Shown here in pieces: positions 27,834-47,515 of a DNA stretch of 64,000 nucleotides. A program made the position numbers and the translations under genes. Below the pieces are notes generated by a model, which was given only the letters and a program-made list of their open reading frames with translations, had not been told where the DNA came from and did no database searches. Location: positions 175,442 to 239,441 of the IMG/VR virus record IMGVR_UViG_3300037010_001702; one strand, given 5' to 3'. Numbering within the stretch: the stretch's first letter is position 1; each line of letters begins with the position of its first letter.

Positions 27834-28919
27834 ATGATAAATGAAAATCAAAAAGTTGGTGATCTTGGGCAACACTGGACACCTCGCGATGTTGTCCAGA
27901 CGATGGTAAAATTGAAGAAAAATAAGGGTCTCACTCTCGAGCCATCAGCGGGTTCCGGCAGGTTTGTTGAAGTTTTACCAGATTGCATTGCTATTGAAAT
28001 AGATGCATCTGTAGTGCCAGATAATCTAAAGCACCAATATCTGATAAGCAATTTCTTCGATGTAGATGAAGATCAGAAGTTCGACACTGTAATTGGTAAT
28101 CCCCCATATGTTGCTGGAAAACTTTTAACCCCAGATTGGTTCAATAATTGGACTGGTGTTTTGCCACGCACTGCTAATGCATATTTGCATATCATTGATA
28201 AGTGTATAAATCATTTGAATGATAAGGGTGAAATAATTTTTATTGTTCCATCATCATTATTTTCAGATAGTAGCAGAGGGAAAGAACTTCGTAAGAAAAT
28301 GCTTTCTCTTGGTGCATTTACTGATGTTATTTTTTGTCACGAACAGGTAGAATGGGAAAATGCTGCTGTAGATACTTTGATCTTCAGATGGCAAAAGGGT
28401 TTAAAACAGAAAAAAGTTAAGACTAATCTTGGAGATAAAATTCTTTTTGAGAGCAATGGTTTTACTTGGTTGATTGATTTTATTCCTGCTGGAACAATGG
28501 GTGAATGGTTTAAAGCTACTGTCGGCAGCGCACCTCTGCGCGCTGCTGTGGAAGCTAAGCGAGGTGGTGAGTACATTAAAGAAGGAAAGATTGTTCTCAT
28601 TGAAGAAACAGAATGTGATAAATGGCCGAGGGTTCATCATACTCCAGTAGGTGATAAACTATTCTATGTTGGCGGACCTATTCGTAGATGGCCTGTTTTT
28701 TTTAGTGGAACTTCAGGAAAGCACTTAGATAATGCTTTGTTGCCAAAACATAAAATTGATATTGTAATGGGAGCAGCTCTGCTTAATGAGTGGTTTAAAG
28801 CTAATGGTGAAGCGCTATCACTTATTAAAGGTGGTAGATGGATATGCGGCGTGAAGCAATTTGAAAACTGCCCTATAACAGAAGAGATGAAAGAAGCATT
28901 ATCTGCTTTATTGGAGTAA
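27834..28919 (+). CDS. N6-adenine DNA methyltransferase (gamma class, Eco57I/TaqI-like)
   Basis: GQHWTP, LEPSAGSGRF (motif I), VIGNPPY (motif IV), FIVP. Confidence 0.88.
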   Translation: MINENQKVGDLGQHWTPRDVVQTMVKLKKNKGLTLEPSAGSGRFVEVLPDCIAIEIDASVVPDNLKHQYLISNFFDVDEDQKFDTVIGNPPYVAGKLLTPDWFNNWTGVLPRTANAYLHIIDKCINHLNDKGEIIFIVPSSLFSDSSRGKELRKKMLSLGAFTDVIFCHEQVEWENAAVDTLIFRWQKGLKQKKVKTNLGDKILFESNGFTWLIDFIPAGTMGEWFKATVGSAPLRAAVEAKRGGEYIKEGKIVLIEETECDKWPRVHHTPVGDKLFYVGGPIRRWPVFFSGTSGKHLDNALLPKHKIDIVMGAALLNEWFKANGEALSLIKGGRWICGVKQFENCPITEEMKEALSALLE

Positions 28920-28957
28920 AGAATCATTCTTAATAACAGTCAAAGCGATGGAGCATA

Positions 28958-29812
28958 ATGACATCAGAAAAAAATATTCGTCCATTTTTGAAGTGGGCAG
29001 GAAACAAGTTTAAAGTTCTTCCAACAATAATCCCGTTAATCTCTCATGGAGAGCGACTTATTGAACCATTTATTGGTTCAGGTTCTTTAATGATTAATAG
29101 GCCTATTCTCAACTATGTTGGCGGAGACATTAACGGGGATTTGATTTCTGTTTTCAATTTTATAAAAACAGAAGGTCAAGATTTTGTAGAAGTTATACGC
29201 CCGCTCTTCTCACAAGAAGAATTTGGTACTGACGGTGAAGCAAACTTCTATGAGCGTCGTGCAGAGTTTAATGAGACTACGGACCTCCGGCGCAAAGCTG
29301 CTCTTTTCATTTATTTAAATCAGCATTGCTTTAATGGACTGTGCAGATATAACCGGCATGGTAAATTCACTACACCTTATAATCTTGGTTTTAAACATAA
29401 GGGAAAGCCTGCAGCCTTCGCTGAAGAACGATTTCTTTATGCACATGAGATGTCTAATTCAGCGCAGTTTGTACATGCCTCTTTTGAAGAGCTAATGATA
29501 ACTGCTAAGAGAGGAGATGTTATTTATTGTGACCCTCCTTATCTTCCACAAGATGATAAGCTTGCTACATTTGTTCAATATGCTAAAGGTGAGTTCTCTA
29601 TTGAGCAACAGACATTACTTGCGAATTTAGCAGATGAACTTCGCAACGTTGGAGTGACAACTGTTATTTCCAATCATAACTCTTCTTTAGCTAAAGAACT
29701 TTATGCTACAGCTGATGAAACCATGACATTTGATGTTTCACGAAGTATGGGAAGATACAAAGACCATGAAAATGCTGCTAGCGAAATACTCGCAGTCTTC
29801 AAAGCAAAATAA
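28958..29812 (+). CDS. dam: Dam-family DNA adenine methyltransferase
   Basis: FLKWAGNK, EPFIGSGS, NGLCRYN, YCDPPY. Confidence 0.92.
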   Translation: MTSEKNIRPFLKWAGNKFKVLPTIIPLISHGERLIEPFIGSGSLMINRPILNYVGGDINGDLISVFNFIKTEGQDFVEVIRPLFSQEEFGTDGEANFYERRAEFNETTDLRRKAALFIYLNQHCFNGLCRYNRHGKFTTPYNLGFKHKGKPAAFAEERFLYAHEMSNSAQFVHASFEELMITAKRGDVIYCDPPYLPQDDKLATFVQYAKGEFSIEQQTLLANLADELRNVGVTTVISNHNSSLAKELYATADETMTFDVSRSMGRYKDHENAASEILAVFKAK

Positions 29813-31542: not shown

Positions 31543-31989
31543 ATGAACAAACAAGAAAAACTTGATTTCCTGTATATGGATATTGCGGCACGCGTATCTG
31601 ATATGTCTTATGGCAGACGTTTAAAGGTAGGAGCAGTCATTGTAAAAGGTGATAACGTAATTTCCATGGGTTGGAACGGTATGCCATCCGGGATGGATAA
31701 CAACTGTGAAATCGAGCATGAGGATGGACATCTATCCACTAGACCAGAAACACTTCATGCTGAGAGTAATGCTCTTATGAAGTTGGCTCGTAGTGGAGGA
31801 GTAGGTTCTCTCGGCGCGACCATCTACACAACATATTCGCCATGCCCAGAATGTGCAAAGCTTATTAAGCAAGCAGGTATTTCTCGGGTAGTTTATCGGC
31901 ACAACTATCGGCTGCTTGATGGTATTGATATGCTTAAGGCACTGGATGTTCCTGTTATTCAACTGAAAGGTCAAAATGAAAGTAAATAG
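31543..31989 (+). CDS. dCMP deaminase (ComEB-like)
   Basis: VGAVIVK, GWNGMPSG, LHAESNA, PCPECAK. Confidence 0.92.
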   Translation: MNKQEKLDFLYMDIAARVSDMSYGRRLKVGAVIVKGDNVISMGWNGMPSGMDNNCEIEHEDGHLSTRPETLHAESNALMKLARSGGVGSLGATIYTTYSPCPECAKLIKQAGISRVVYRHNYRLLDGIDMLKALDVPVIQLKGQNESK

Positions 31990-32045: not shown

Positions 32046-32270
32046 ATGTCTCAAGTTGCTGATATGCTTGGCCAATCAGGTATTCTGCGAAATGCCCGCA
32101 TAGTTCGCGAGGAGTTCGACCCATTAAATAGTGATCATCGTGATTCACTTCGCGAGTTTTTGGATACTGGTAACTGGGGTAAAATACAATTTTACCCAGA
32201 GGCTCCTTGCTTGAATGTTCCTGAAACAGTTCTTCGCAAGATGGCTCATTGGGCACTTGAGAATAAGTAG
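32046..32270 (+). CDS. Hypothetical protein
   Basis: AGGAG RBS; TAGTG coupling to the next gene. Confidence 0.6.
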   Translation: MSQVADMLGQSGILRNARIVREEFDPLNSDHRDSLREFLDTGNWGKIQFYPEAPCLNVPETVLRKMAHWALENK

Positions 32271-32788
32271 TGAAAACAGAACTGAATACTAGAACGCTTT
32301 GGTTTGACGGCACTAGTCAGGTTGCTCCTGAGGATGTCCCAAGTTTACTTCTGGGTGGGTGCAAGATAGATGAGTTGGTTGTTTCTGAACTGAACGATGA
32401 TCTCAGGTTATTTAACCTTCTTGAAGAAGAACCCATTCTAACAGAAAAGAATGAGAACAAACCATTCGACTTTACCTACCTTATTGCAAAAGAATATGAT
32501 CGCTTTGATCTTGAGGGATACATTCGCAAGAAGGTCAGTGAAAAGTTTGCTGATGAACCAGCTTACCTAGCTCGAGTTGAAGCTGAGATGATTGAGATCA
32601 AGAAGAGAGGTATGGAGAAGCTTTACATCACCCTGATCTACATTGTAGACAAGTTTAAAGAGTTGGGCACTGTTTGGGGAGTTGGGCGAGGTTCATCCTG
32701 TGCTAGTCTAATTTTATTTCTGATTGATCTGCATAAGGTTGACCCCATCAAATATAATATTCCAATGACAGAGTTCTTCCACGATTGA
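32270..32788 (+). CDS. DNA polymerase III alpha (DnaE)-like fragment 1
   Basis: RVEAEM, WGVGRGSSCASLILFLI, VDPIKYNI - the DnaE GRGS palm segment. Confidence 0.8.
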   Translation: MKTELNTRTLWFDGTSQVAPEDVPSLLLGGCKIDELVVSELNDDLRLFNLLEEEPILTEKNENKPFDFTYLIAKEYDRFDLEGYIRKKVSEKFADEPAYLARVEAEMIEIKKRGMEKLYITLIYIVDKFKELGTVWGVGRGSSCASLILFLIDLHKVDPIKYNIPMTEFFHD

Positions 32789-33499: not shown

Positions 33500-34186
33500 A
33501 TGAAGTTGGACGAAATAAAACCTATCAATGAATGGAATGCGGGAGCACTAGATACTAATCTAGATGATATTGGCACTCTAAAATTAGATGATGGGGAAAT
33601 ATTAGTTCACTTTACCACAGCTGCATTAGATGGAATCCCTATTGTTGTTTATTGGGATAAGTCGCTTAAGCCTTCTCATGGATTTATTCTTGCTTCAAAA
33701 GGCGAACCTATTGGTGAAATTTTAACCAAGCATCTCAAAGGTGGAGAACAGATTTTATCAGTTGTTATTAAGCCACCCTTTAGGGGGAAACAGATTATAG
33801 AGAATGCTTATCTAGCAATCGTGTCTGCTTCGGGGTTAACTATTATCTCGGGTGATCAATTATCAAAGCCTGCCGAAAAGATATGGTTAAATCTGCAGAA
33901 CAAATGTAAAATTTACGATTCTAAATTAGATAAATTTTATGCTATGTCTGATATTGGAAAAAAGACTGAAGATGATGTTGAAATTATTTCTCCTAAAGAA
34001 GATAAAAGCACATCTCATGATGCACCAAGATTTCATCTGGCATTAATGGGATCAGGAGTCTCTCACCAAAAGAAAATTCAAGAAGAGATCAAAAAGAATC
34101 GACCAGCATATAAAAACACTTCTATCTTAGAATCTATAACTGGTAAAATTAATGTTAGTGCTGGCGTTAGCCGCATATTTCTTTAA
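33500..34186 (+). CDS. GNAT-like acetyltransferase with MKLDEI leader
   Basis: PIGEIL, VIKPPFRGKQI, SGDQLSKPAEKIW. Confidence 0.55.
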   Translation: MKLDEIKPINEWNAGALDTNLDDIGTLKLDDGEILVHFTTAALDGIPIVVYWDKSLKPSHGFILASKGEPIGEILTKHLKGGEQILSVVIKPPFRGKQIIENAYLAIVSASGLTIISGDQLSKPAEKIWLNLQNKCKIYDSKLDKFYAMSDIGKKTEDDVEIISPKEDKSTSHDAPRFHLALMGSGVSHQKKIQEEIKKNRPAYKNTSILESITGKINVSAGVSRIFL

Positions 34187-34196
34187 AGGAAATTAA

Positions 34197-34751
34197 ATGG
34201 TCCCGTATGTATATCAAATAACACTAATACATACTGGTGAATTTTATATAGGCGTCAATTCGCAAAAACGCTCACCCAGAAAATTTGTGGAAAACATATT
34301 TTACATCATCTAAAAAATTAAGGAGTTAATTAAAATACATGGTAAAGATGTTTGGCGAATTGATTTTATTGAAGAATTTAATTCTCCTAAAGAAGCTCAA
34401 CTTAGGGAAAGTGAATTACAACTTTCTTGTCCTCGAGATAAATTACTTAATATTAGATTAGGAAATACTCTATTTAACCGGTCCGGACCATTATCTCAAG
34501 AAACAAAAAATAAAATATCAGCGTCACGAAAAGGTGGGACTGGGTGGACTAAAGGAAAACCACTATCTGAAGAAACTAAAAACAAAATTTCTAAATCAAA
34601 GATGGGTGCCCCAACTAATATATCAGGTGAAGCTAAAAAACAGATGAAAGAAAATTTGTCAAAGGCGAAAACAGGAATAAAACTTGGTCCTCAAAATCCA
34701 GAATGGATACAGAAAAGAATTAAGTCACGAATGGTATCCGGTTGCGCTTAA
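34197..34751 (+). pseudogene. Frameshifted GIY-YIG homing endonuclease with NUMOD3 repeats
   Basis: PYVYQI...FYIG, then YFTSSK and SQETKNKIS / SEETKNKISKS in shifted frames. Confidence 0.75.
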
Positions 34752-34847
34752 GGGCCAAAAGAAATTCACTAGAAATATTACACCCGAAAAACAAGCATTA
34801 CTAACTGGAAAAAGATTAAATACTTTTAGGATTAATAGGGCACAAAA

Positions 34848-36161
34848 ATGATTTTTTCAATACTGACAATGCTTTCAGCGCTATCGCTGGAAATAATAGG
34901 CACTATCATAAGTGTTATAGGGTTATCGTCGATTTTTTCGGGTAGCTACATAATAGTTATATTAGCAGTGTGTTTAGATTTTGCAAAACTGATTGCAGTT
35001 TCCTTCCTCTATAAGTATTGGAAGAAAGTAAATCTTCTAATGAAGACATACATGACGATTGCAGCTATTGTCCTAATGAGCATTACTTCAGCTGGGGCAT
35101 TTGGTTATCTATCAGCACAGTTCCAAAAGGCAATCTCCAGTACTAATGAATCATCAGTCGTTATCACTGCCTTAGCCGATGAGCAGACACGTCTTCAAAA
35201 GCGTAAGGAAGAGATTGACACTCAGATAGCAAAGCTGCCTGGCAACATGGTGGCTGGTCGTAGATCGCTTATGAAGCAGTTTGCGCCAGAGGTAGAGCAA
35301 ATCAACACCCGACTGGTTGCAATTGATACTGAGCTTCCAAAGCTTAAGGTAGAAACCCTTAAGCAGAACGTAGAGGTTGGTCCAATCATCTACATCGCTG
35401 AAGCATTTCACACTACGCCTGCTCAGGCGGTTAAGTGGGTTATTCTGATCATCATCTTTGTATTTGACCCGCTTGCTATCACTCTTCTTCTTTCTGGTAA
35501 CTTTTTGTTTGAGCAGAAGGGCCAAGAAAGAATTAACATACAGATACGCAAGCTAGAAATACCACCAGATCCAAGCTTGAAGAAGGACGATGACATTACC
35601 GTGGTGCCAGCAAGTGAAGCCTTCACGCCGACAACATCGCCGCCAGCAGTCGCAAATTCTTTTGACACGTATATAACTCGCTACAATGTGACTGGAGCTG
35701 CTGTTATCAATCCGAATACTTTCTCGATGCGGGCTACGTATCGAGACCAAGCAGAAATTATCGAACAAGTTATCCCTCCAACTCCTGAGGAACCAGAAAC
35801 TGAACTGCCTGTTGTTAGCGGGGCTGAGCATGCTCCCGTCGTAGAATTTTCTCCTATTGAAGAAGAACACGCTCCAGCTGAAACCCCAGCGGTATTTGAA
35901 CAAGCTCATATCGCCGGAGAACGAGAGATCATAAAGCTAAATCAGTTAATGAAGAATAATGCTACACAGCCCATCATTGCGCGCTCTCAGCTTGAGGATG
36001 TTGTAGTGCCAATACATCGCTCTCAACTTGAGGACGTCACCGTAAAAGGTGACGTCCTTGTCGGTGAAGGTGCTCTTGCACATCAACCAAACACAGAAGC
36101 TTTGCGACGAATTTACGGTGATGAAGCTGTCTCAATTGGCGGACCATCTGATAGAGTCTAA
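34848..36161 (+). CDS. Membrane protein with coiled coil and low-complexity C-terminus
   Basis: Four hydrophobic N-terminal helices, coiled coil, IIFVFDPLAI helix, Pro/Glu-rich tail. Confidence 0.6.
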   Translation: MIFSILTMLSALSLEIIGTIISVIGLSSIFSGSYIIVILAVCLDFAKLIAVSFLYKYWKKVNLLMKTYMTIAAIVLMSITSAGAFGYLSAQFQKAISSTNESSVVITALADEQTRLQKRKEEIDTQIAKLPGNMVAGRRSLMKQFAPEVEQINTRLVAIDTELPKLKVETLKQNVEVGPIIYIAEAFHTTPAQAVKWVILIIIFVFDPLAITLLLSGNFLFEQKGQERINIQIRKLEIPPDPSLKKDDDITVVPASEAFTPTTSPPAVANSFDTYITRYNVTGAAVINPNTFSMRATYRDQAEIIEQVIPPTPEEPETELPVVSGAEHAPVVEFSPIEEEHAPAETPAVFEQAHIAGEREIIKLNQLMKNNATQPIIARSQLEDVVVPIHRSQLEDVTVKGDVLVGEGALAHQPNTEALRRIYGDEAVSIGGPSDRV

Positions 36162-36405: not shown

Positions 36406-37314
36406 ATGAAGCCTTCTATTTGGGTTGCAAAATACCGTCCTAAAACCATCGCTGATGTCATTTTCCAAGATGACCGGCAGCGTACCACCTTTGAGAATTT
36501 TGTAAGGGAGGGTGACCTTCAAAACTTACTTCTTACTGGTATCCAAGGAACTGGTAAGACAACAATCTCAAGAGCCCTCTTGAATGATTTGGGAGTTGAT
36601 TCGTCTGACATCTTACGTGTTAACTGCTCTGATGAAAAGATTGAAGCAATGCGCAGCAAGGTTACCAGCTTTGCATGGACTATGCCAATTGGTAAGTTCA
36701 AGGTTGTTCAGCTTGAAGAATTCGATTATCTATCCCTTGATGGTCAGGCTCTACTTCGCAGCTTGATTGAGGATACATCTGCCTCCACTCGCTTTATTGC
36801 TACTTGCAATTACGAGAACAAGATCATTCCTCCGCTCAAATCTCGCTTTCAGCAATTCAGCTTCAAAGCTCCTGACAAGGACCTCATCGCTGGGCGCATG
36901 ATTGAAATCCTTGATGCTGAAAAAGTAGAGTATGAACCAGAAGATTTGCTGACATACATCGACGTTGGTTACCCAGATATAAGAAAAACAATTCAGCTTC
37001 TTCAGCAGAACACTCAAAGCGGAAAGCTTCTACCTCCATCTAATGCTGCAATAGACAGTGATTGGAAATTTGGTTTGCTTGATGCGATTAGTTCTGGTGA
37101 CTTCAAGAAAGCGCGTAAGCTAGTTTGCGAAACTGCTACTCGTGAAGAACATGAGGATGTCTTTACATTTCTGTATCAGAATATTAACAAGATGAAGGTT
37201 AGTGACAAAGAAGCTGCCATCGTGACGATTGCTAGTTACATGCGCGGTCACATTCAAAGCTCAGACACTGAGCTCAACATTGCTGCCCTTTTCGTGGAAC
37301 TAAGTAAAGTATGA
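36406..37314 (+). CDS. Clamp loader large subunit (T4 gp44 / RFC-like)
   Basis: WVAKYRP, GIQGTGKTT, LEEFDYLS, LKSRF. Confidence 0.9.
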   Translation: MKPSIWVAKYRPKTIADVIFQDDRQRTTFENFVREGDLQNLLLTGIQGTGKTTISRALLNDLGVDSSDILRVNCSDEKIEAMRSKVTSFAWTMPIGKFKVVQLEEFDYLSLDGQALLRSLIEDTSASTRFIATCNYENKIIPPLKSRFQQFSFKAPDKDLIAGRMIEILDAEKVEYEPEDLLTYIDVGYPDIRKTIQLLQQNTQSGKLLPPSNAAIDSDWKFGLLDAISSGDFKKARKLVCETATREEHEDVFTFLYQNINKMKVSDKEAAIVTIASYMRGHIQSSDTELNIAALFVELSKV

Positions 37315-37520
37315 ACCAAGAATTAATTGATACGCTTAGAAAAATGGTACCTAATATCATGGCTGAAGAACTGTGCGAGGTGCAGCCTATGGATGATGAA
37401 ATTTTTACGCATGCAATGGTTGAAGGAAAATCTGAAAAATGGCTTATTGAGAATGGATATGAGCTTGTTGATTCTCAAACACGATTGATGTGGGTAAAGA
37501 AAGATGGCAACAACACATAA
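37311..37520 (+). CDS. Small protein resembling the gp23 Gol-peptide segment
   Basis: LRKMVPNIMAEELCEVQPM; ATGA coupling to gp44 and overlap with gp62. Confidence 0.55.
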   Translation: MNQELIDTLRKMVPNIMAEELCEVQPMDDEIFTHAMVEGKSEKWLIENGYELVDSQTRLMWVKKDGNNT

Positions 37521-37968
37521 ACTTGACATCTTCGACTTGCTGTCTCGCATTAACTCTGCAAAGAGTGGTGATATCTATTCTACGTTGAGTGACGACGAGA
37601 AGAAAGGATTCAACCCATTAGTTGTCATGCGCTGGTTGTCTGGAACATCAGATGAGCGGCAGATTATCCTACTCAATGAGTTTGTAAATAAGTATGTCTT
37701 CACTCTTGCTAAGCATCCGCAACTCTTGATGCAGCTAATGCAGGTAGCATCCTCAAAAACAAGTAAACGTTACCAATGGATTGGTGTAAAATCTAATAAG
37801 AAGAACACCAACTCTCGCAAGGTTGTTCAGGAGTATTTTGAAATGTCTTCACGAGAAGTTAATCTCGTGAATCCGTTTCCTTGTGAGGCAGAGATTATGC
37901 AGATGGCAGAAGAACTTGGATGGCAGAAGGAGGAGCTAGCAGCTCTTAAAAAGGAATTCAAAGAATGA
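37504..37968 (+). CDS. Clamp loader small subunit (T4 gp62-like)
   Basis: LDIFDLL, FNPLVVMRWLS, adjacent to gp44. Confidence 0.65.
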   Translation: MATTHKLDIFDLLSRINSAKSGDIYSTLSDDEKKGFNPLVVMRWLSGTSDERQIILLNEFVNKYVFTLAKHPQLLMQLMQVASSKTSKRYQWIGVKSNKKNTNSRKVVQEYFEMSSREVNLVNPFPCEAEIMQMAEELGWQKEELAALKKEFKE

Positions 37969-39357: not shown

Positions 39358-39933
39358 ATGCTTGCAGATATTGACATAGACTTACCGACGCAGTTCAAAC
39401 CTAAAACTTTGTTCCCTTGGACTAGAGCAAGTATGGTAAAGAATGGAGAGTTGGGTCCTCATCCGTGCGGATACTATCCTCAGAATATTCCAGTAGATCA
39501 AATCACTAAACTTGCTGCTATACCTTACGGTGATGCAGAAGAATTAGGGTACGGAAAAATCGACTTTCTGCATTTGTCCGTCTACGATTACTTTGAAACG
39601 CGAGAAGAGATTGATGCTCTACTTGAAGAAGAACCAGATTGGGGGTTGTTGCTGATACCCTCAGAGCAAGTAAAGTTGTTTCAACTTGCAAAGCACGGTG
39701 ATATTCTAACAGCAGTAAAGCCAAAGTGCATTGAGGAATTGGCTGACGTGTTAGCTCTTATTAGACCAGGCAAGAAGCAGTTGGTAAAGCTTTATCATTC
39801 ACAGCGAGATGCTACTCGTCGAATCCTTTATGCAAAGGATGAGAACGGCTACTCATTTAAGAAGGCGCATGCGGTGAGTTATGCTATGGTGGTGGTGCTA
39901 CAGCTCCACCTTATATCTGCCGGCATCATATGA
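39358..39933 (+). CDS. DNA polymerase III alpha (DnaE)-like fragment 2 (catalytic DIDxD)
   Basis: ADIDID, HPCG, KIDFLHL, LALIRPG, YSFKKAHAVSY. Confidence 0.8.
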   Translation: MLADIDIDLPTQFKPKTLFPWTRASMVKNGELGPHPCGYYPQNIPVDQITKLAAIPYGDAEELGYGKIDFLHLSVYDYFETREEIDALLEEEPDWGLLLIPSEQVKLFQLAKHGDILTAVKPKCIEELADVLALIRPGKKQLVKLYHSQRDATRRILYAKDENGYSFKKAHAVSYAMVVVLQLHLISAGII

Positions 39934-40703: not shown

Positions 40704-41804
40704 ATGATGAAAATATATAGCTGCGGTGGAGCAGTCCGCGATAAATTACTGGACCTACCTGTCAGCGACATGGATTATGTTGTTGTGGGTTCCACCGAGC
40801 GAGAAATGCTGGATGCTGGATTTAAACCTGCTGGAGCATTCTTTCCTGTCTTTCTACACCCTACTACCGGGGACGAATACGCCCTCGCCCGTAAGGAAAA
40901 GAAGAGTGGAGCAGGCCATACGGCTTTCACTGTAGAATTCGACAAGGAAGTTACCCTGGAGGAAGACCTAGCTCGGCGTGATCTGACGATCAATGCGATG
41001 GCAAAGGATCTGGAAACTGGAGAAATCGTTGACCCATTCCATGGTCAACGAGATTTGAAGCACAAAATCCTGCGTCATACGTCCGATGCTTTTGCTGAAG
41101 ACCCCCTGCGCGTGGTTCGCCTTGCCAGATTCTATGCTCGCTTTGACGACTTCGGAGTGGCAGATGAGACGCTGGCAATGGCTCAGAAGGTTGTTCAGTC
41201 TGGTGAAATGGATACTCTGTCCGAAGAACGTTTTTGGGCTGAAATGGACAAGATGTTTCGCACTTGCAGAAAGCCTGACCGCTTCTTTGCTGCGCTGTGG
41301 AGCTTCTATGCTCTAGACAATGTGAAGTTTTTCAAGGATCTGTTTGGTGACAGAACTACCATAGAAGATCTGACTTGCATTGAAGAGTTTGCTATTATGG
41401 CTTCTCGTACTCATCCAGACTTTAGGCTGACTGCATTCGTTGCAGTAGCTGGAAAGTTTGCGCACGACATCAAGGGAACGACTACTGAGATGATGAAGTT
41501 GCATAAGGCTGTGCAAGCAGTCAGAAGTCTGCCAGATGAAATGACGGGATTGGATTTGCTAAACTTTTTGAAGAACATGGGCGCAAGCACAAAGCCTTCG
41601 AAGACACTAGAAAATCTGTACGATCTACTTCGCCTAGGTCCAAAATCTTTGGATACAAAACTGAGTGCTGACAGTTTGACTACTATTTTTGAAGCAGCAC
41701 ATTCTGTTAAGTCTGACGAACCAACGTTTGCTGGACTGGAAGGTATCGCTCTAGGATATGCAATGAACAAAGAACGTGTTAAAAGAATTGATGGAGTACT
41801 ATGA
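40704..41804 (+). CDS. cca: tRNA nucleotidyltransferase (CCA-adding enzyme)
   Basis: GGAVRDKLL, DMDYVV, DLARRDLTINAMA, EDPLRVVR, ERFWAE. Confidence 0.9.
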   Translation: MMKIYSCGGAVRDKLLDLPVSDMDYVVVGSTEREMLDAGFKPAGAFFPVFLHPTTGDEYALARKEKKSGAGHTAFTVEFDKEVTLEEDLARRDLTINAMAKDLETGEIVDPFHGQRDLKHKILRHTSDAFAEDPLRVVRLARFYARFDDFGVADETLAMAQKVVQSGEMDTLSEERFWAEMDKMFRTCRKPDRFFAALWSFYALDNVKFFKDLFGDRTTIEDLTCIEEFAIMASRTHPDFRLTAFVAVAGKFAHDIKGTTTEMMKLHKAVQAVRSLPDEMTGLDLLNFLKNMGASTKPSKTLENLYDLLRLGPKSLDTKLSADSLTTIFEAAHSVKSDEPTFAGLEGIALGYAMNKERVKRIDGVL

Positions 41805-42415: not shown

Positions 42416-43432
42416 ATGATGAATGAAACAATGATGTTTAAGGTTCTAGTTGGAAGTCGACTTTACGGAACACATACAGCAAAGTCTGACTTTGACTACA
42501 AGGTAGTTGTCTTGCCAAGCATGGATGATCTGCTAATGGGTAAAAAGCTTGCTAATCGTAAGGAGAAGCCAGAAGGTTCAAATGCGAATAGCAAGATGCA
42601 AGCTGGTGAAGCTGAAACAGAATACTTGCCGCTTCAAGTCTTCATGGATGATTTGTACAACGGCCAAACATACGCCCTCGAATTGATGTTCGCATTCAAT
42701 CAGGGGCTAGCAGAACGATGTAACGACCATGTTTTGAATAACAAGGTTACTGTCATGATGCGGGAACTTCAAGACAGGTTCTTGAATAGCACCATGAAGA
42801 AGATGGTGGGATACGCAGTTGCACAATCTCAGTTGTACGGTCTGAAGACAGAACGTTTCACAACCTTGAAGAAGGTTGTTGAGTTACTTACTGAGCACCT
42901 TGCCTTCTTTCCCGACCACACCACGATGGCTAATGAAGATGGACTACGCAATAAACTGCTACTACTTCCTCACGTAAAGCCGGTGATGATAGAGAATTCC
43001 GCTGGTGGATCAGCCCTTGCTCCAGCCTTGGACATAGTCGGAAAGAAGTTTCCGCTAACTAACAAGGTGCACACTTTGCTAGCATCTCTAAACGGATTGC
43101 TTGCTGGATACGGAGATCGCGTAGCATCATTTGAGGGAGAGGGTGTCGATTGGAAGGCATTGAGTCATGCAGTTCGGATAACGACTCAAGTGCTTGAACT
43201 TTCTAAGACAGGAAAGATGACATTCCCTAATGCACAAGCAGATATGCTGCGCGATATGAAGGAAGGAAAGATGACTCTTGAAGATGCAACTACATTGCTC
43301 GCGAATCATTTTAACCAGATAGATGCCGCAGTTGCTAACTCCACTTTGCCTTTGCGCAACCCAGTAATGGATGCAGATTTTGCAAAGTGGAAGCTAATGT
43401 GGCTACGTGCCTTCTACAGCGGGCAGCTTTAA
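42416..43432 (+). CDS. Pol-beta superfamily nucleotidyltransferase (NrdC.11/RlaP-like)
   Basis: VGSRLYGTHTAKSDFDYK, WKALSHAVR. Confidence 0.75.
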   Translation: MMNETMMFKVLVGSRLYGTHTAKSDFDYKVVVLPSMDDLLMGKKLANRKEKPEGSNANSKMQAGEAETEYLPLQVFMDDLYNGQTYALELMFAFNQGLAERCNDHVLNNKVTVMMRELQDRFLNSTMKKMVGYAVAQSQLYGLKTERFTTLKKVVELLTEHLAFFPDHTTMANEDGLRNKLLLLPHVKPVMIENSAGGSALAPALDIVGKKFPLTNKVHTLLASLNGLLAGYGDRVASFEGEGVDWKALSHAVRITTQVLELSKTGKMTFPNAQADMLRDMKEGKMTLEDATTLLANHFNQIDAAVANSTLPLRNPVMDADFAKWKLMWLRAFYSGQL

Positions 43433-46210: not shown

Positions 46211-47515
46211 ATGTCTAATTTTGTTCAAGTAATCAAGGAATGCGAAGCTGCTAATGGTGCGGGCACCAAGAAGATTATTCAAGCAGCTCTTGCAAAGGCT
46301 GATGAAATTGCTCAACAGCTTATTATTTATGCATTATCGCCATACCAGGTTTTTGGTGTTCGCAAGTTTGATATGCCAAAGTCTGGACCGAAGGTTACTC
46401 CCAAAAATGCATATGAGGAATTTTTCTGTGTCCTTGAACGTTTGGTCTCTCATGATCTAACTGGCGATGCTGCTCGAAATGCGGTCACTGGTGCTCTTGG
46501 TGGCTTTACTCTTGAAGAGCAAGATTACATTGTTCGAGTCCTTGACAAGGATTTGAAAGCCGGTTTCTCCGCAGATACTTTCAACAAGATCTGGCCTAAC
46601 AACAAGATTCCTACGTTCGAGGTAATGCTTGCTGACAAATGTGAAAACACTGAAGACTTCGAAAAGTATGTCATCTTCCCCTGCCAAGCAGACTGGAAGT
46701 TCGATGGACAGCGCAATATTGCTATCCAGCGCGAAGGTCAACCAGCTGACAATCGTGCTCGCTCTGGCAAGGCTTCTGAACACCTGAACGGTTTATTCGA
46801 TGAAGACCTCGCAAAAATCCGTGAATACCTCGGCTATGACTTCATTTTGGACGGTGAAGCCTTTGCTTCTGACTTTACTGAAACAATCAATGCCAAGAAG
46901 GCTGGCAATGATACTGCAAAAGCTAACATGCGCATTCGTGCATTCTTCTTGATGCCTCTAACTGATTGGATTGCACAGAAGACTAATATCACTATGCGTC
47001 AAAATCGCAAGGCTCTCGGAGAAATTCTGAAGGCTTGTGACTGCAAGAAGATCACTCTCTCCGAAGGTCGTGAAGTTACCGACTACCACGACATGATGGA
47101 ATACTGCAACGAAGTGATCGACGTTCACAAGCAAGAAGGTCTGATCTTGAAGGATTGGGATTCTGAATACACTTGGGATCGTACCTTCGCGTGGACCAAG
47201 GTGAAGCGCTTCTACGACGTGGATGCGCGATTCATCTCCTTCTACCCAGGCCGTCCAAAGAGCCGCCTCGCTAACACTGTTGGCGGCGCAAACTGTGTTG
47301 CCTTCCTTGAAAATGGCGAACGCATTGAGTTCAAAGTTGGCTCTGGCTTCTCTGACAAGGACCGTGAAGACATGAAGACTAACCCTGACAAGTGGTTGAA
47401 GCTTACGCATGTCATCAAGTACCAAGAAGTATCCCGTTCAAAGGGTAAGGAAGTTGCGTCTCTTCGGTTCTGCACCTATGAACGTTCGCGTGACGACAAA
47501 ATGGTGGAGATTTAA
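46211..47515 (+). CDS. ATP-dependent DNA ligase
   Basis: DWKFDGQR (motif I), ILDGEA, EGLILKD, WTKVK, KVGSGFSD. Confidence 0.9.
   Translation: MSNFVQVIKECEAANGAGTKKIIQAALAKADEIAQQLIIYALSPYQVFGVRKFDMPKSGPKVTPKNAYEEFFCVLERLVSHDLTGDAARNAVTGALGGFTLEEQDYIVRVLDKDLKAGFSADTFNKIWPNNKIPTFEVMLADKCENTEDFEKYVIFPCQADWKFDGQRNIAIQREGQPADNRARSGKASEHLNGLFDEDLAKIREYLGYDFILDGEAFASDFTETINAKKAGNDTAKANMRIRAFFLMPLTDWIAQKTNITMRQNRKALGEILKACDCKKITLSEGREVTDYHDMMEYCNEVIDVHKQEGLILKDWDSEYTWDRTFAWTKVKRFYDVDARFISFYPGRPKSRLANTVGGANCVAFLENGERIEFKVGSGFSDKDREDMKTNPDKWLKLTHVIKYQEVSRSKGKEVASLRFCTYERSRDDKMVEI

What the first reader, a model, noticed from the sequence alone, without database searches (positions are those of the whole stretch)
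37311..37520. Stand-alone Gol-peptide-like mini-protein inserted between the clamp-loader genes
LRKMVPNIMAEELCEVQPM aligns without gaps to VRRAIPNLIAFDICGVQPM, the core of the T4 gp23 Gol peptide as I recall it (9/19 identical, most others conservative). In T4 this capsid segment binds EF-Tu and triggers the Lit protease abortive-infection system. Here the motif is detached from any capsid gene, placed in a 69-aa ORF translationally coupled within a replication operon, and made more acidic (F>E, G>E). Inference: an early-expressed capsid mimic acting as decoy or inhibitor of capsid-sensing defences, or an EF-Tu-binding translation modulator.
Basis: partly seen in the sequence, partly recalled or inferred. 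Interest (0 to 1): 0.75.

Follow-up and report, generated by a model that had tools for sequence, protein, structure and literature searches.

The report
Stand-alone capsid Gol-segment mini-protein family
A real 69-residue phage gene between the two clamp-loader genes belongs to a widespread, unnamed family of mini-proteins whose front half copies the most conserved segment (the "Gol" segment) of T4-type capsid proteins; that makes it a plausible early-made capsid mimic, but its function is untested.

Summary
ORF 37311-37520 (+) encodes a 69-aa acidic protein. Its start overlaps the stop of a gp44-like clamp-loader gene (ATGA), and its last 17 nt overlap the start of a gp62-like gene.

Residues 3-28 match the Gol segment of Gp23-type major capsid proteins:
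- The phage's own capsid protein: 10/23 identical, pairwise E 3e-5.
- This protein alone is sub-threshold against Pfam Gp23 (E 0.012).

The protein is not an orphan. A profile search found at least 282 clusters of 57-125-aa phage proteins with two conserved blocks:
- Block 1, Gol-like: IA-EE-I-x-S-VQPM.
- Block 2, family-specific: L-x3-GY-x-PV...L-x-W-I-K-K.

The family profile's only significant matches to solved structures are T4 gp23 chains (E 0.002). A profile-profile comparison with capsid proteins gives E 1.9e-6.

Members are accessory: they are absent from two complete related jumbo phage genomes. In every context I examined they lie co-oriented in replication, recombination or early-gene clusters, and all six checkable genomes have a Gp23-type capsid protein. 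A more capsid-like variant occupies the same gp44|gp62 slot in relatives.

Function is inferred only. The best reading is an early-made mimic of the capsid Gol segment that engages whatever recognises that segment. An EF-Tu co-fold gave no verdict.

The parts
36406..37314 (+). gp44-like clamp-loader large subunit (AAA+), 302 aa; its stop overlaps the start of the mini-protein gene (ATGA).
   Evidence: phrog_168 E 7e-76; Pfam AAA E 4e-13, with a weak Gp44_lid match.
37311..37520 (+). Gol-segment mini-protein gene: 69 aa, pI 4.45 (P0001).
   Evidence: ORF. Family of at least 282 clusters. AlphaFold2 model with mean pLDDT 89.9. pI.
37317..37394 (+). Block 1 (residues 3-28): amphipathic helix followed by the VQPM loop, similar to the Gol / N-terminal segment of Gp23-type capsid proteins.
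   Evidence: Pfam Gp23 profile positions 6-31. Own capsid protein residues 58-80. T4 gp23 residues 93-119 at family level. hhalign E 1.9e-6.
37443..37502 (+). Block 2 (residues 45-64): family-specific L-x3-G-Y-x-P-V ... L-x-W-x-K motif, predicted as a short helix plus a beta-hairpin. This copy has Leu52 where 97% of members have Pro.
   Evidence: Column statistics on 146 members. Secondary structure of the model. No match of this block to capsid proteins.
37504..37968 (+). Probable gp62-like clamp-loader small subunit, 154 aa; starts 17 nt before the mini-protein's stop codon.
   Evidence: phrog_225 'clamp loader' E 2e-5 and phrog_11758 E 8e-26. Same position and N-terminal sequence as in relatives.

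Best explanation
What it is (well supported). The ORF is a genuine, conserved accessory gene of phages that build T4-type (Gp23-family) capsids. It encodes a compact mini-protein of about 65 residues. The N-terminal helix plus VQPM loop is homologous, or at least profile-level similar, to the Gol / N-terminal segment, which is described as the most conserved part of gp23. The C-terminal half is a family-specific module: two short helices and a GY...W hairpin. The gene is co-transcribed and translationally coupled with the clamp-loader genes, so it should be made early or in the middle of infection, before the late capsid protein.

How it most likely works (inferred, not shown). It presents a folded, soluble copy of the generic Gol surface ahead of capsid synthesis, and so occupies whatever cellular factor recognises that segment on nascent capsid protein. 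In T4 the known binder is EF-Tu (domains II and III), and the known sensor is the Lit protease acting on the Gol:EF-Tu complex. The most economical version is non-productive engagement of a low-abundance capsid sensor, which would be counter-defence. The alternative is modulation of EF-Tu.
For: - Real gene and family: 39 small homologues down to E 1e-28; 282 clusters at E <= 1e-3 and 192 at E <= 1e-10, nearly all 57-125 aa; confident fold, pLDDT 89.9.
- Specific likeness to the Gol segment. In reverse, the family profile finds the capsid proteins of other jumbo phages.
- Always with a Gp23-type capsid: all six checkable genomes that carry a member (five of the main type; phage X1 carries the capsid-like variant) have a Gp23-family capsid protein.
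- Phage-only: no relative turned up in a pattern scan of the genomes of 185,579 bacterial and archaeal species.
- Early or middle operons: in every context I examined the gene is co-oriented within replication, recombination or early-gene clusters. Slots seen are gp44|X|gp62, gp45|X|gp44, gp47|X|gp46, DNA polymerase|X, NrdH|X, near gp59/gp32, and arrays of small ORFs. It was never next to the capsid gene.
- Accessory, as counter-defence genes usually are: absent from two 100%-complete related genomes, and from the gp44|gp62 slot of the closest relatives.
- It keeps the generic Gol consensus rather than tracking its own capsid protein: the own-pair scores are not enriched in the small-protein versus capsid-protein matrix. 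This fits a conserved external target.
- A second, more capsid-like variant occupies the same slot in relatives: hhalign E 1.3e-9 over 39 columns.
- Literature: the Gol segment binds EF-Tu domains II and III and licenses Lit cleavage, and it is described as the most conserved part of gp23 (PMC3014915).
Against: - No binding or phenotype data exist.
- The EF-Tu co-fold gave no verdict.
- The hydrophobic stripe of the helix is probably packed against block 2 in the folded protein. Part of the shared conservation may therefore reflect packing rather than a shared ligand.
- EF-Tu is far too abundant to be titrated by a small early protein.
- A faithful Gol mimic could trigger Lit-type suicide rather than block it.
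- The family was not found in Escherichia T-even phages, where Gol/Lit was defined; those records matched only through their capsid genes.
- P14 of the Gol core is only 56% conserved.
- Early timing is inferred from operon membership only.
Confidence: 0.33

Rival explanations
1. Capsid-assembly modulator. The mini-protein acts in trans as a spare N-terminal/Gol segment. It would bind the phage's own (or a co-infecting phage's) capsid protein, scaffold or chaperonin, and so time, chaperone or poison Gp23-type head assembly.
For: - It occurs only in phages with Gp23-type capsid proteins.
- The variant in L012/L115 extends the likeness into the first strand after VQPM.
- In other HK97-fold capsids the N-terminal arm is a scaffold and neighbour contact (general knowledge, not tested here).
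Against: - The gene is never in the structural module; it always lies in replication or early clusters.
- It is accessory, and absent from complete relatives that assemble the same kind of capsid.
- There is no co-variation with the cognate capsid protein.
Confidence: 0.2
2. Replisome or clamp-loader accessory factor. The protein works with the clamp, clamp loader or recombination nucleases. Its likeness to the capsid segment would be ancestral baggage or convergence with no functional meaning.
For: The gene recurs inside the gp45-gp44-gp62 cluster in the window's lineage (window, L090, L089, L011, L012, L115). It also does so in two unrelated T4-like lineages: DLP_6 (gp44|X|gp62) and L092 (gp45|X|gp44). 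It lies twice between gp47 and gp46.
Against: - Other members lie in arrays of small early ORFs, after NrdH, or among queuosine genes.
- The gp44|gp62 gap is a general dumping slot that holds unrelated ORFs in close relatives.
- This reading does not explain why the capsid-like residues are among the most conserved in the family.
- The conserved Trp lies in a predicted hairpin rather than a free clamp-binding tail.
Confidence: 0.12
3. No function: a chance ORF or a decaying fragment of a duplicated capsid gene.
For: - The single-sequence match to Pfam Gp23 is below the curated threshold.
- This copy carries Leu at a position that is Pro in 97% of members.
Against: - There are hundreds of full-length homologues with a conserved second block, down to about 30% identity.
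- The fold is predicted confidently.
- Start and stop are exactly coupled to the flanking genes.
- The same protein is seen on 5 contigs, and the gp44-gp62 stretch that contains the gene recurs almost word for word in four metagenome runs.
Confidence: 0.02

Closest known systems
Gol segment of T4 gp23 (residues about 93-122), the trigger of the e14 Lit protease through EF-Tu
   Same: Same conserved core pattern, R-x3-P-x2-I-A-x-[DE]-[IL]-x2-V-Q-P-M, with 9/19 identities to T4. The family profile's only significant PDB matches are gp23 residues 93-119.
   Different: It is a separate 65-aa protein, not part of a capsid protein of 410-520 aa, and it has its own C-terminal module. It is encoded in early or middle replication operons. 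It is acidic. EF-Tu binding and Lit activation are untested. It was not found in Escherichia T-even phages.
Pfam PF07068 (Gp23 major capsid protein family); phrog_138 and phrog_12830
   Same: Local similarity to profile positions about 3-32.
   Different: Only about 26-33 residues align. The score (15.5 bits) is below the gathering cut-off (24.4 bits). There is no HK97-fold body.
phrog_21284 (labelled 'hydrolase', 62-position profile) and phrog_27117 (unknown function)
   Same: 20 and 8 of the 41 family members match these small PHROGs at E <= 1e-3. They are probably partial representations of the same family.
   Different: P0001 itself matches them only weakly (E 0.005 and 0.1). Nothing seen here supports the 'hydrolase' label: there is no catalytic motif, no Pfam or NCBIfam match, and no structural match.
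Phage-encoded molecular mimics and decoys used in counter-defence, such as the DNA mimic Ocr, and small phage proteins sensed by CapRel-type capsid sensors (PMC9712102 for capsid sensing)
   Same: It is a small, acidic, accessory protein from an early operon that resembles a phage component known to be sensed by host immunity.
   Different: No interaction or phenotype has been shown. In this case the mimicry would be of a protein segment of the phage's own capsid.

Membership tests
Gp23-family major capsid protein (PF07068) | Whole-protein score above the curated cut-off (24.4 bits) across the profile of about 376 positions | tested here: not met
   15.5 bits, E 0.012, covering only profile positions 6-31. 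The genuine capsid gene of this phage scores 317 bits.
Gp23-family major capsid protein (PF07068) | HK97-type fold body (P and A domains) | tested here: not met
   The protein is 69 aa. The model is three helices plus a hairpin, with no capsid-like structural match.
Functional Gol peptide (T4 gol/lit system) | Sequence core of gp23 residues about 97-119 | tested here: met
   9/19 identities to T4. The family profile matches gp23 residues 93-119 at E 0.002 against the whole PDB. hhalign gives E 1.9e-6.
Functional Gol peptide (T4 gol/lit system) | Binds EF-Tu (domains II and III) | tested here: inconclusive
   The co-fold with EFTU1_ECOLI scored 0.00 and returned no verdict. The host EF-Tu is unknown.
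Functional Gol peptide (T4 gol/lit system) | Licenses Lit (Peptidase U49) cleavage of EF-Tu at Gly59-Ile60 | not testable with these tools
   This needs an in vitro cleavage assay or a plating test.
New mini-protein family (this report; overlaps phrog_21284 and phrog_27117) | Block 1: I-A-x-[ED]-[IL]-x2-V-Q-P-M after an amphipathic helix | tested here: met
   The window copy has all the conserved residues: A18, V24, Q25, P26, M27.
New mini-protein family (this report; overlaps phrog_21284 and phrog_27117) | Block 2: L-x3-G-Y-x-P-V ... L-x-W-x-K | tested here: met
   L45, G49, Y50, V53, L59, W61 and K63 are present. The exception is P52, which is Leu in this copy but Pro in 97% of members. The profile scores this copy at 104 bits.
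New mini-protein family (this report; overlaps phrog_21284 and phrog_27117) | Small stand-alone protein encoded in a replication or early cluster of a phage with a Gp23-type capsid | tested here: met
   plus the context.

The most novel reading that the evidence does not exclude
Phages with T4-type capsids carry a dedicated, horizontally shuffled 'capsid-segment decoy'. This would be an early-made mini-protein that displays the invariant Gol surface of the major capsid protein. It would pre-empt host factors that recognise that surface on nascent capsid protein, either blocking Lit-like or other capsid-triggered abortive-infection sensors or reprogramming EF-Tu. It would be, as far as I could find, the first counter-defence that works by mimicking the phage's own capsid trigger. 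It would also explain why the Gol segment is the most conserved part of gp23.
Probability: 0.28. Interest if true: 0.85.

Novelty: new variant of a known kind. Interest (0 to 1): 0.62.

Why it matters
The Gol segment is the classic example of a capsid-derived trigger of abortive infection. It is also reported to be the most conserved part of T4-type capsid proteins, and the reason for that conservation has not been settled.

This family is stand-alone, conserved and phage-only. It keeps exactly that segment, in early or replication operons. That gives a simple handle on the question, because several cultured phages carry a member: Stenotrophomonas phages DLP_6, Mendera, Marzo and Yut2; Xanthomonas phage Xoo-sp13; and Agrobacterium phage Atu_ph04. 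Deletion, pull-down and plating tests are therefore straightforward.

If the protein binds EF-Tu or a capsid sensor, it would be a new class of counter-defence or host-takeover factor. If it binds capsid or scaffold proteins, it would be a new assembly regulator. Either way, a family of at least 282 clusters with no Pfam or NCBIfam model deserves a name.

Tried and rejected
- **EF-Tu co-fold.** Complex prediction with E. coli EF-Tu and the mini-protein (with alignment A5) scored 0.00 and gave no verdict. I do not use it for or against binding.
- **Structure searches with the confident model.** Foldseek against the PDB, VIA-align wide, BFVD and the ESM Atlas returned nothing except two family members in BFVD. 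The Atlas feature search gave only unnamed clusters below the meaningful score.
- **Model of the phage's own capsid protein.** I wanted to compare the local conformation of the Gol segment. The model failed (pLDDT 34 with a 5-sequence alignment) and I did not use it.
- **'Mini-capsid protein made of two capsid segments'.** I asked whether block 2 derives from the C-terminal DAGY-x-PY motif of the capsid protein. hhalign aligns only block 1, so I rejected this.
- **Recent copy of the phage's own capsid gene, or co-evolution with it.** The small-protein versus capsid-protein identity matrix shows no own-pair enrichment, so I rejected this.
- **EF-Tu-like fusion.** One member (P0129) has an N-terminal extension with a weak GTP_EFTU match (E 0.006). 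It is a generic P-loop fragment that aligns over a longer stretch with RecA. It is not evidence for an EF-Tu link.
- **Other family libraries.** PADLOC and NCBIfam gave nothing.
- **Bacterial genomes.** The pattern scan found no relative.
- **Megablast of the region against cultured phages.** No match.
- **RNA evidence.** Only one metatranscriptome holds 5% of the sampled words, so I did not lay reads.
- **Primary literature.** The Gol mutagenesis paper (PubMed 10801848) is not held. I could therefore not compare which Gol residues are needed for EF-Tu binding with the family's conservation.

Full report
**1. The gene**

The ORF at 37311..37520 (+) encodes 69 residues (P0001). Three features tie it to its neighbours:
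- Its ATG overlaps the TGA of the upstream 302-aa gp44-like clamp-loader gene (36406..37314; phrog_168, E 7e-76).
- The downstream 154-aa gene (37504..37968; phrog_225 'clamp loader', E 2e-5) starts 17 nt before the ORF's stop.
- No promoter-like or terminator-like site lies between the three genes.

They therefore form one translationally coupled unit. The protein is acidic, with pI 4.45.

The window is the last 64 kb of a 239-kb IMG/VR virus record that CheckV rates 67% complete. The same protein occurs on a contig of 290,571 bp, so this is a jumbo phage. Near-identical DNA is present in sediment and microbial-mat metagenomes.

**2. The likeness to the capsid Gol segment**

Chain 6uzc_a reads PAVMGMVRRAIPNLIAFDICGVQPMNS at gp23 residues 93-119, which gives 9/19 identities with residues 9-27 of the ORF.

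Taken alone, the ORF is marginal:
- Pfam Gp23: E 0.012, 15.5 bits against a 24.4-bit cut-off, residues 3-28 on profile positions 6-31.
- phrog_12830 and phrog_138 ('major head protein'): E 0.001 and 0.036.
- T4 gp23 in the PDB: E 0.79.

It is clearer within the phage's own genome:
- The phage's own capsid protein (412 aa; G000:C1 about 149.3-150.5 kb, outside the window; 317 bits to Gp23) aligns at residues 58-80 with 10/23 identities, pairwise E 3e-5.
- In the whole 239-kb record, the Gp23 profile matches only the capsid gene and this ORF.

**3. It belongs to a family**

- tblastn against cultured phages found full-length small homologues in Xanthomonas phage Xoo-sp13 and Agrobacterium phage Atu_ph04. 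It also found a related ORF in Xanthomonas phage X1, and more than 1,300 capsid-gene matches to residues 5-28.
- Scanning relatives found through the gp44-like protein turned up two more copies in the same slot.
- A 5-sequence profile retrieved 39 proteins of 57-126 aa, with E down to 1e-28 in a database of 5.8 billion proteins.
- An exhaustive HMMER search of 1.84 billion cluster representatives found 282 clusters at E <= 1e-3 and 192 at E <= 1e-10. Nearly all are 57-125 aa, with the domain usually at the C-terminal end.

Column statistics on 146 members show two conserved blocks:
- Block 1: R10 69%, P14 56%, I/L/M17, A18 88%, E/D20, I/L21, V24 91%, Q25 97%, P26 96%, M27 81%.
- Block 2: L45 100%, G49 95%, Y50 96%, P52 97%, V53 80%, L59 89%, W61 95%, K63 93%.

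The window copy has every one of these except P52, where it has Leu.

AlphaFold2 with this alignment gives a confident compact model with mean pLDDT 89.9. It has a helix at residues 3-22, the VQPM loop, helices at 31-38 and 42-47, and a hairpin at 50-52/61-63.

No Pfam, NCBIfam or PADLOC model covers the family. Two small PHROGs, phrog_21284 (labelled 'hydrolase') and phrog_27117, partly overlap it. Nothing I saw supports the 'hydrolase' label.

**4. The likeness is significant at family level and confined to block 1**

- The family profile, searched against all PDB sequences, returns the four T4 gp23 sequences as its top and only significant hits (E 0.002-0.004, gp23 residues 93-119).
- 19 of 41 members individually match Pfam Gp23 at E <= 0.1, best 6e-7.
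- hhalign of the family against seven capsid proteins gives Prob 89.7%, E 1.9e-6 over 33 columns (capsid residues 58-90), and no second match.
- In reverse, the family profile picks out the capsid genes of other jumbo phages.

**5. Distribution**

- Every genome with a member that I could check has a Gp23-family capsid protein: the window's own record, Xoo-sp13, Atu_ph04, X1, DLP_6 and Mendera.
- Among 50,697 cultured phage records, only Stenotrophomonas phages (DLP_6, Mendera, Marzo, Yut2), Xoo-sp13 and Atu_ph04 carry the main type.
- Escherichia T-even phages matched only through their capsid genes.
- A pattern scan of the genomes of 185,579 prokaryote species found no relative.
- The gene is accessory. 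Two related jumbo phage genomes rated 100% complete (345 kb and 517 kb) have no stand-alone member; there the profile matches only their capsid genes.
- The closest relatives by gp44 identity (76%, 69% and 68%) have other ORFs, or nothing, between gp44 and gp62.

**6. Genomic context**

In every context I examined the gene is co-oriented inside replication, recombination or early-gene clusters. It was never next to the capsid gene.

| Context | Where seen |
|---|---|
| gp44 \| X \| gp62 | window, L090 (338 kb), L089 (368 kb, with extra ORFs), L011, DLP_6 |
| gp45 \| X \| gp44 | L092 |
| gp47 \| X \| gp46 | L105, and X1 for the variant |
| DNA polymerase \| X | Xoo-sp13 |
| RNR-NrdH \| X | Atu_ph04 |
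| Near gp33-like, gp59 and gp32 | L103 |
| Near gp46 and queuosine genes | L106 |
| Long arrays of small ORFs | Mendera, L091, L104, L107 |

Early or middle expression is an inference from these operons and from T4 biology. I did not measure it.

**7. A second, more capsid-like variant**

In relatives L012 and L115, the slot directly after gp44 holds an 80-81-aa protein. Its front half matches capsid proteins even better: hhalign Prob 96.4%, E 1.3e-9 over 39 columns, including the first strand after VQPM. Its tail (GY-x-RYYG-x-W-I) is only loosely like block 2. It is conserved at 55% identity across contigs. The X1 ORF between gp47 and gp46 behaves similarly (E 3.9e-7). Keeping a free-standing Gol segment is therefore recurrent in these phages.

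**8. Mechanism**

Shown: homology-level likeness to the Gol segment, family conservation, accessory status, operon context, and co-occurrence with Gp23-type capsids.

Inferred: the protein displays the generic Gol surface before capsid synthesis begins, and so engages whatever recognises that surface.

- The small proteins resemble each other and the general capsid consensus. They do not track their own phage's capsid protein. This argues for a conserved external target rather than a phage-specific partner.
- From the literature, the Gol segment binds EF-Tu domains II and III, inhibits its GTPase, and makes EF-Tu a substrate for Lit. It has been noted as the most conserved part of gp23 (PMC3014915).
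- EF-Tu is too abundant to titrate. If the function is counter-defence, non-productive binding to a scarce sensor is more plausible than sequestering EF-Tu.

Against: there are no functional data, and the EF-Tu co-fold gave no verdict. Part of the shared conservation may be helix packing against block 2. The family is missing from the phages where Gol/Lit was defined.

I put the mimic model at about one in three. The rivals are a capsid-assembly modulator (about 0.2), a replisome accessory factor (about 0.12) and a non-functional ORF (about 0.02). The remainder is unassigned.

**9. Comparison with what is known, and novelty**

The protein is not a member of the capsid family: its score is below the cut-off and it has no HK97 body. 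It shares the sequence core of the Gol peptide, but the functional criteria (EF-Tu binding, Lit activation) are untested.

Three literature searches found no paper describing a stand-alone Gol-like protein.

I rate it a new variant of a known kind: a free-standing derivative of a known capsid segment that forms a new, unnamed family. If the decoy reading holds, the mechanism would be new.

Noticed in passing
window 32270-32788 and 39358-39933 (also L115 444-872): A DNA polymerase III alpha-like enzyme appears to be encoded in separate small genes several kb apart. One is a 172-aa ORF with the DNA_pol3_alpha NTPase domain (E 1.2e-13; phrog_11127). The other is a 191-aa ORF with the DNA_pol3_finger domain (E 1.2e-5; phrog_11778, E 3e-58). 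The clamp-loader genes lie between them. The pieces match PHROG profiles of the same short length, so the split looks stable in this phage group.
   Followed up: partly
window 37314-37504 slot; loci L008-L046: The gap between gp44 and gp62 is a hypervariable slot in this phage group. Relatives carry nothing, unrelated small ORFs, proteins of 200-340 aa, or the Gol-like mini-proteins.
   Followed up: partly
window 34186-34848: This stretch of about 660 bp, between a 228-aa ORF and the 437-aa membrane/coiled-coil ORF, holds only short overlapping ORFs in different frames. One begins with a GIY...YIG-like string by eye. Pfam found nothing. It may be a decayed homing-endonuclease gene; this is unconfirmed.
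   Followed up: partly
window 37464-37466 (codon 52 of the mini-protein): The window copy has Leu where 97% of 146 family members have Pro (GY-x-P-V). The 75%-identical relative P0002 has Pro. The functional meaning is unknown.
   Followed up: no
L011 3500-4042; proteins P0043, P0005, P0040, P0037: In some relatives the mini-protein domain is embedded in a longer protein with Cys/His-rich segments on one or both sides (C-x-C-x-C-H... and C-P-x-C-G-H). These look like zinc-ribbon-like additions.
   Followed up: no
P0129 / L107 4001-4321: In one member the first half of the Gol-like helix is replaced by a P-loop-like fragment (G-H-x2-H-G-K-T). It resembles the RecA and EF-Tu P-loops only weakly, and is probably a recombination chimera.
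   Followed up: yes
L091 5688-6155: In one metagenomic phage, a gene with a precomputed Pfam Tad3 hit (by its name probably an anti-Thoeris family; I did not check this) lies 2.5 kb downstream of the family member, in the same array of small ORFs.
   Followed up: no
window 27834-29812, 31543-31989, 40704-41804, 42416-43432, 46211-47515: The neighbourhood encodes two DNA methyltransferases, a dCMP deaminase, a tRNA nucleotidyltransferase, another nucleotidyltransferase and an ATP-dependent DNA ligase. This is an ordinary nucleotide-metabolism and replication module for a jumbo phage.
   Followed up: no
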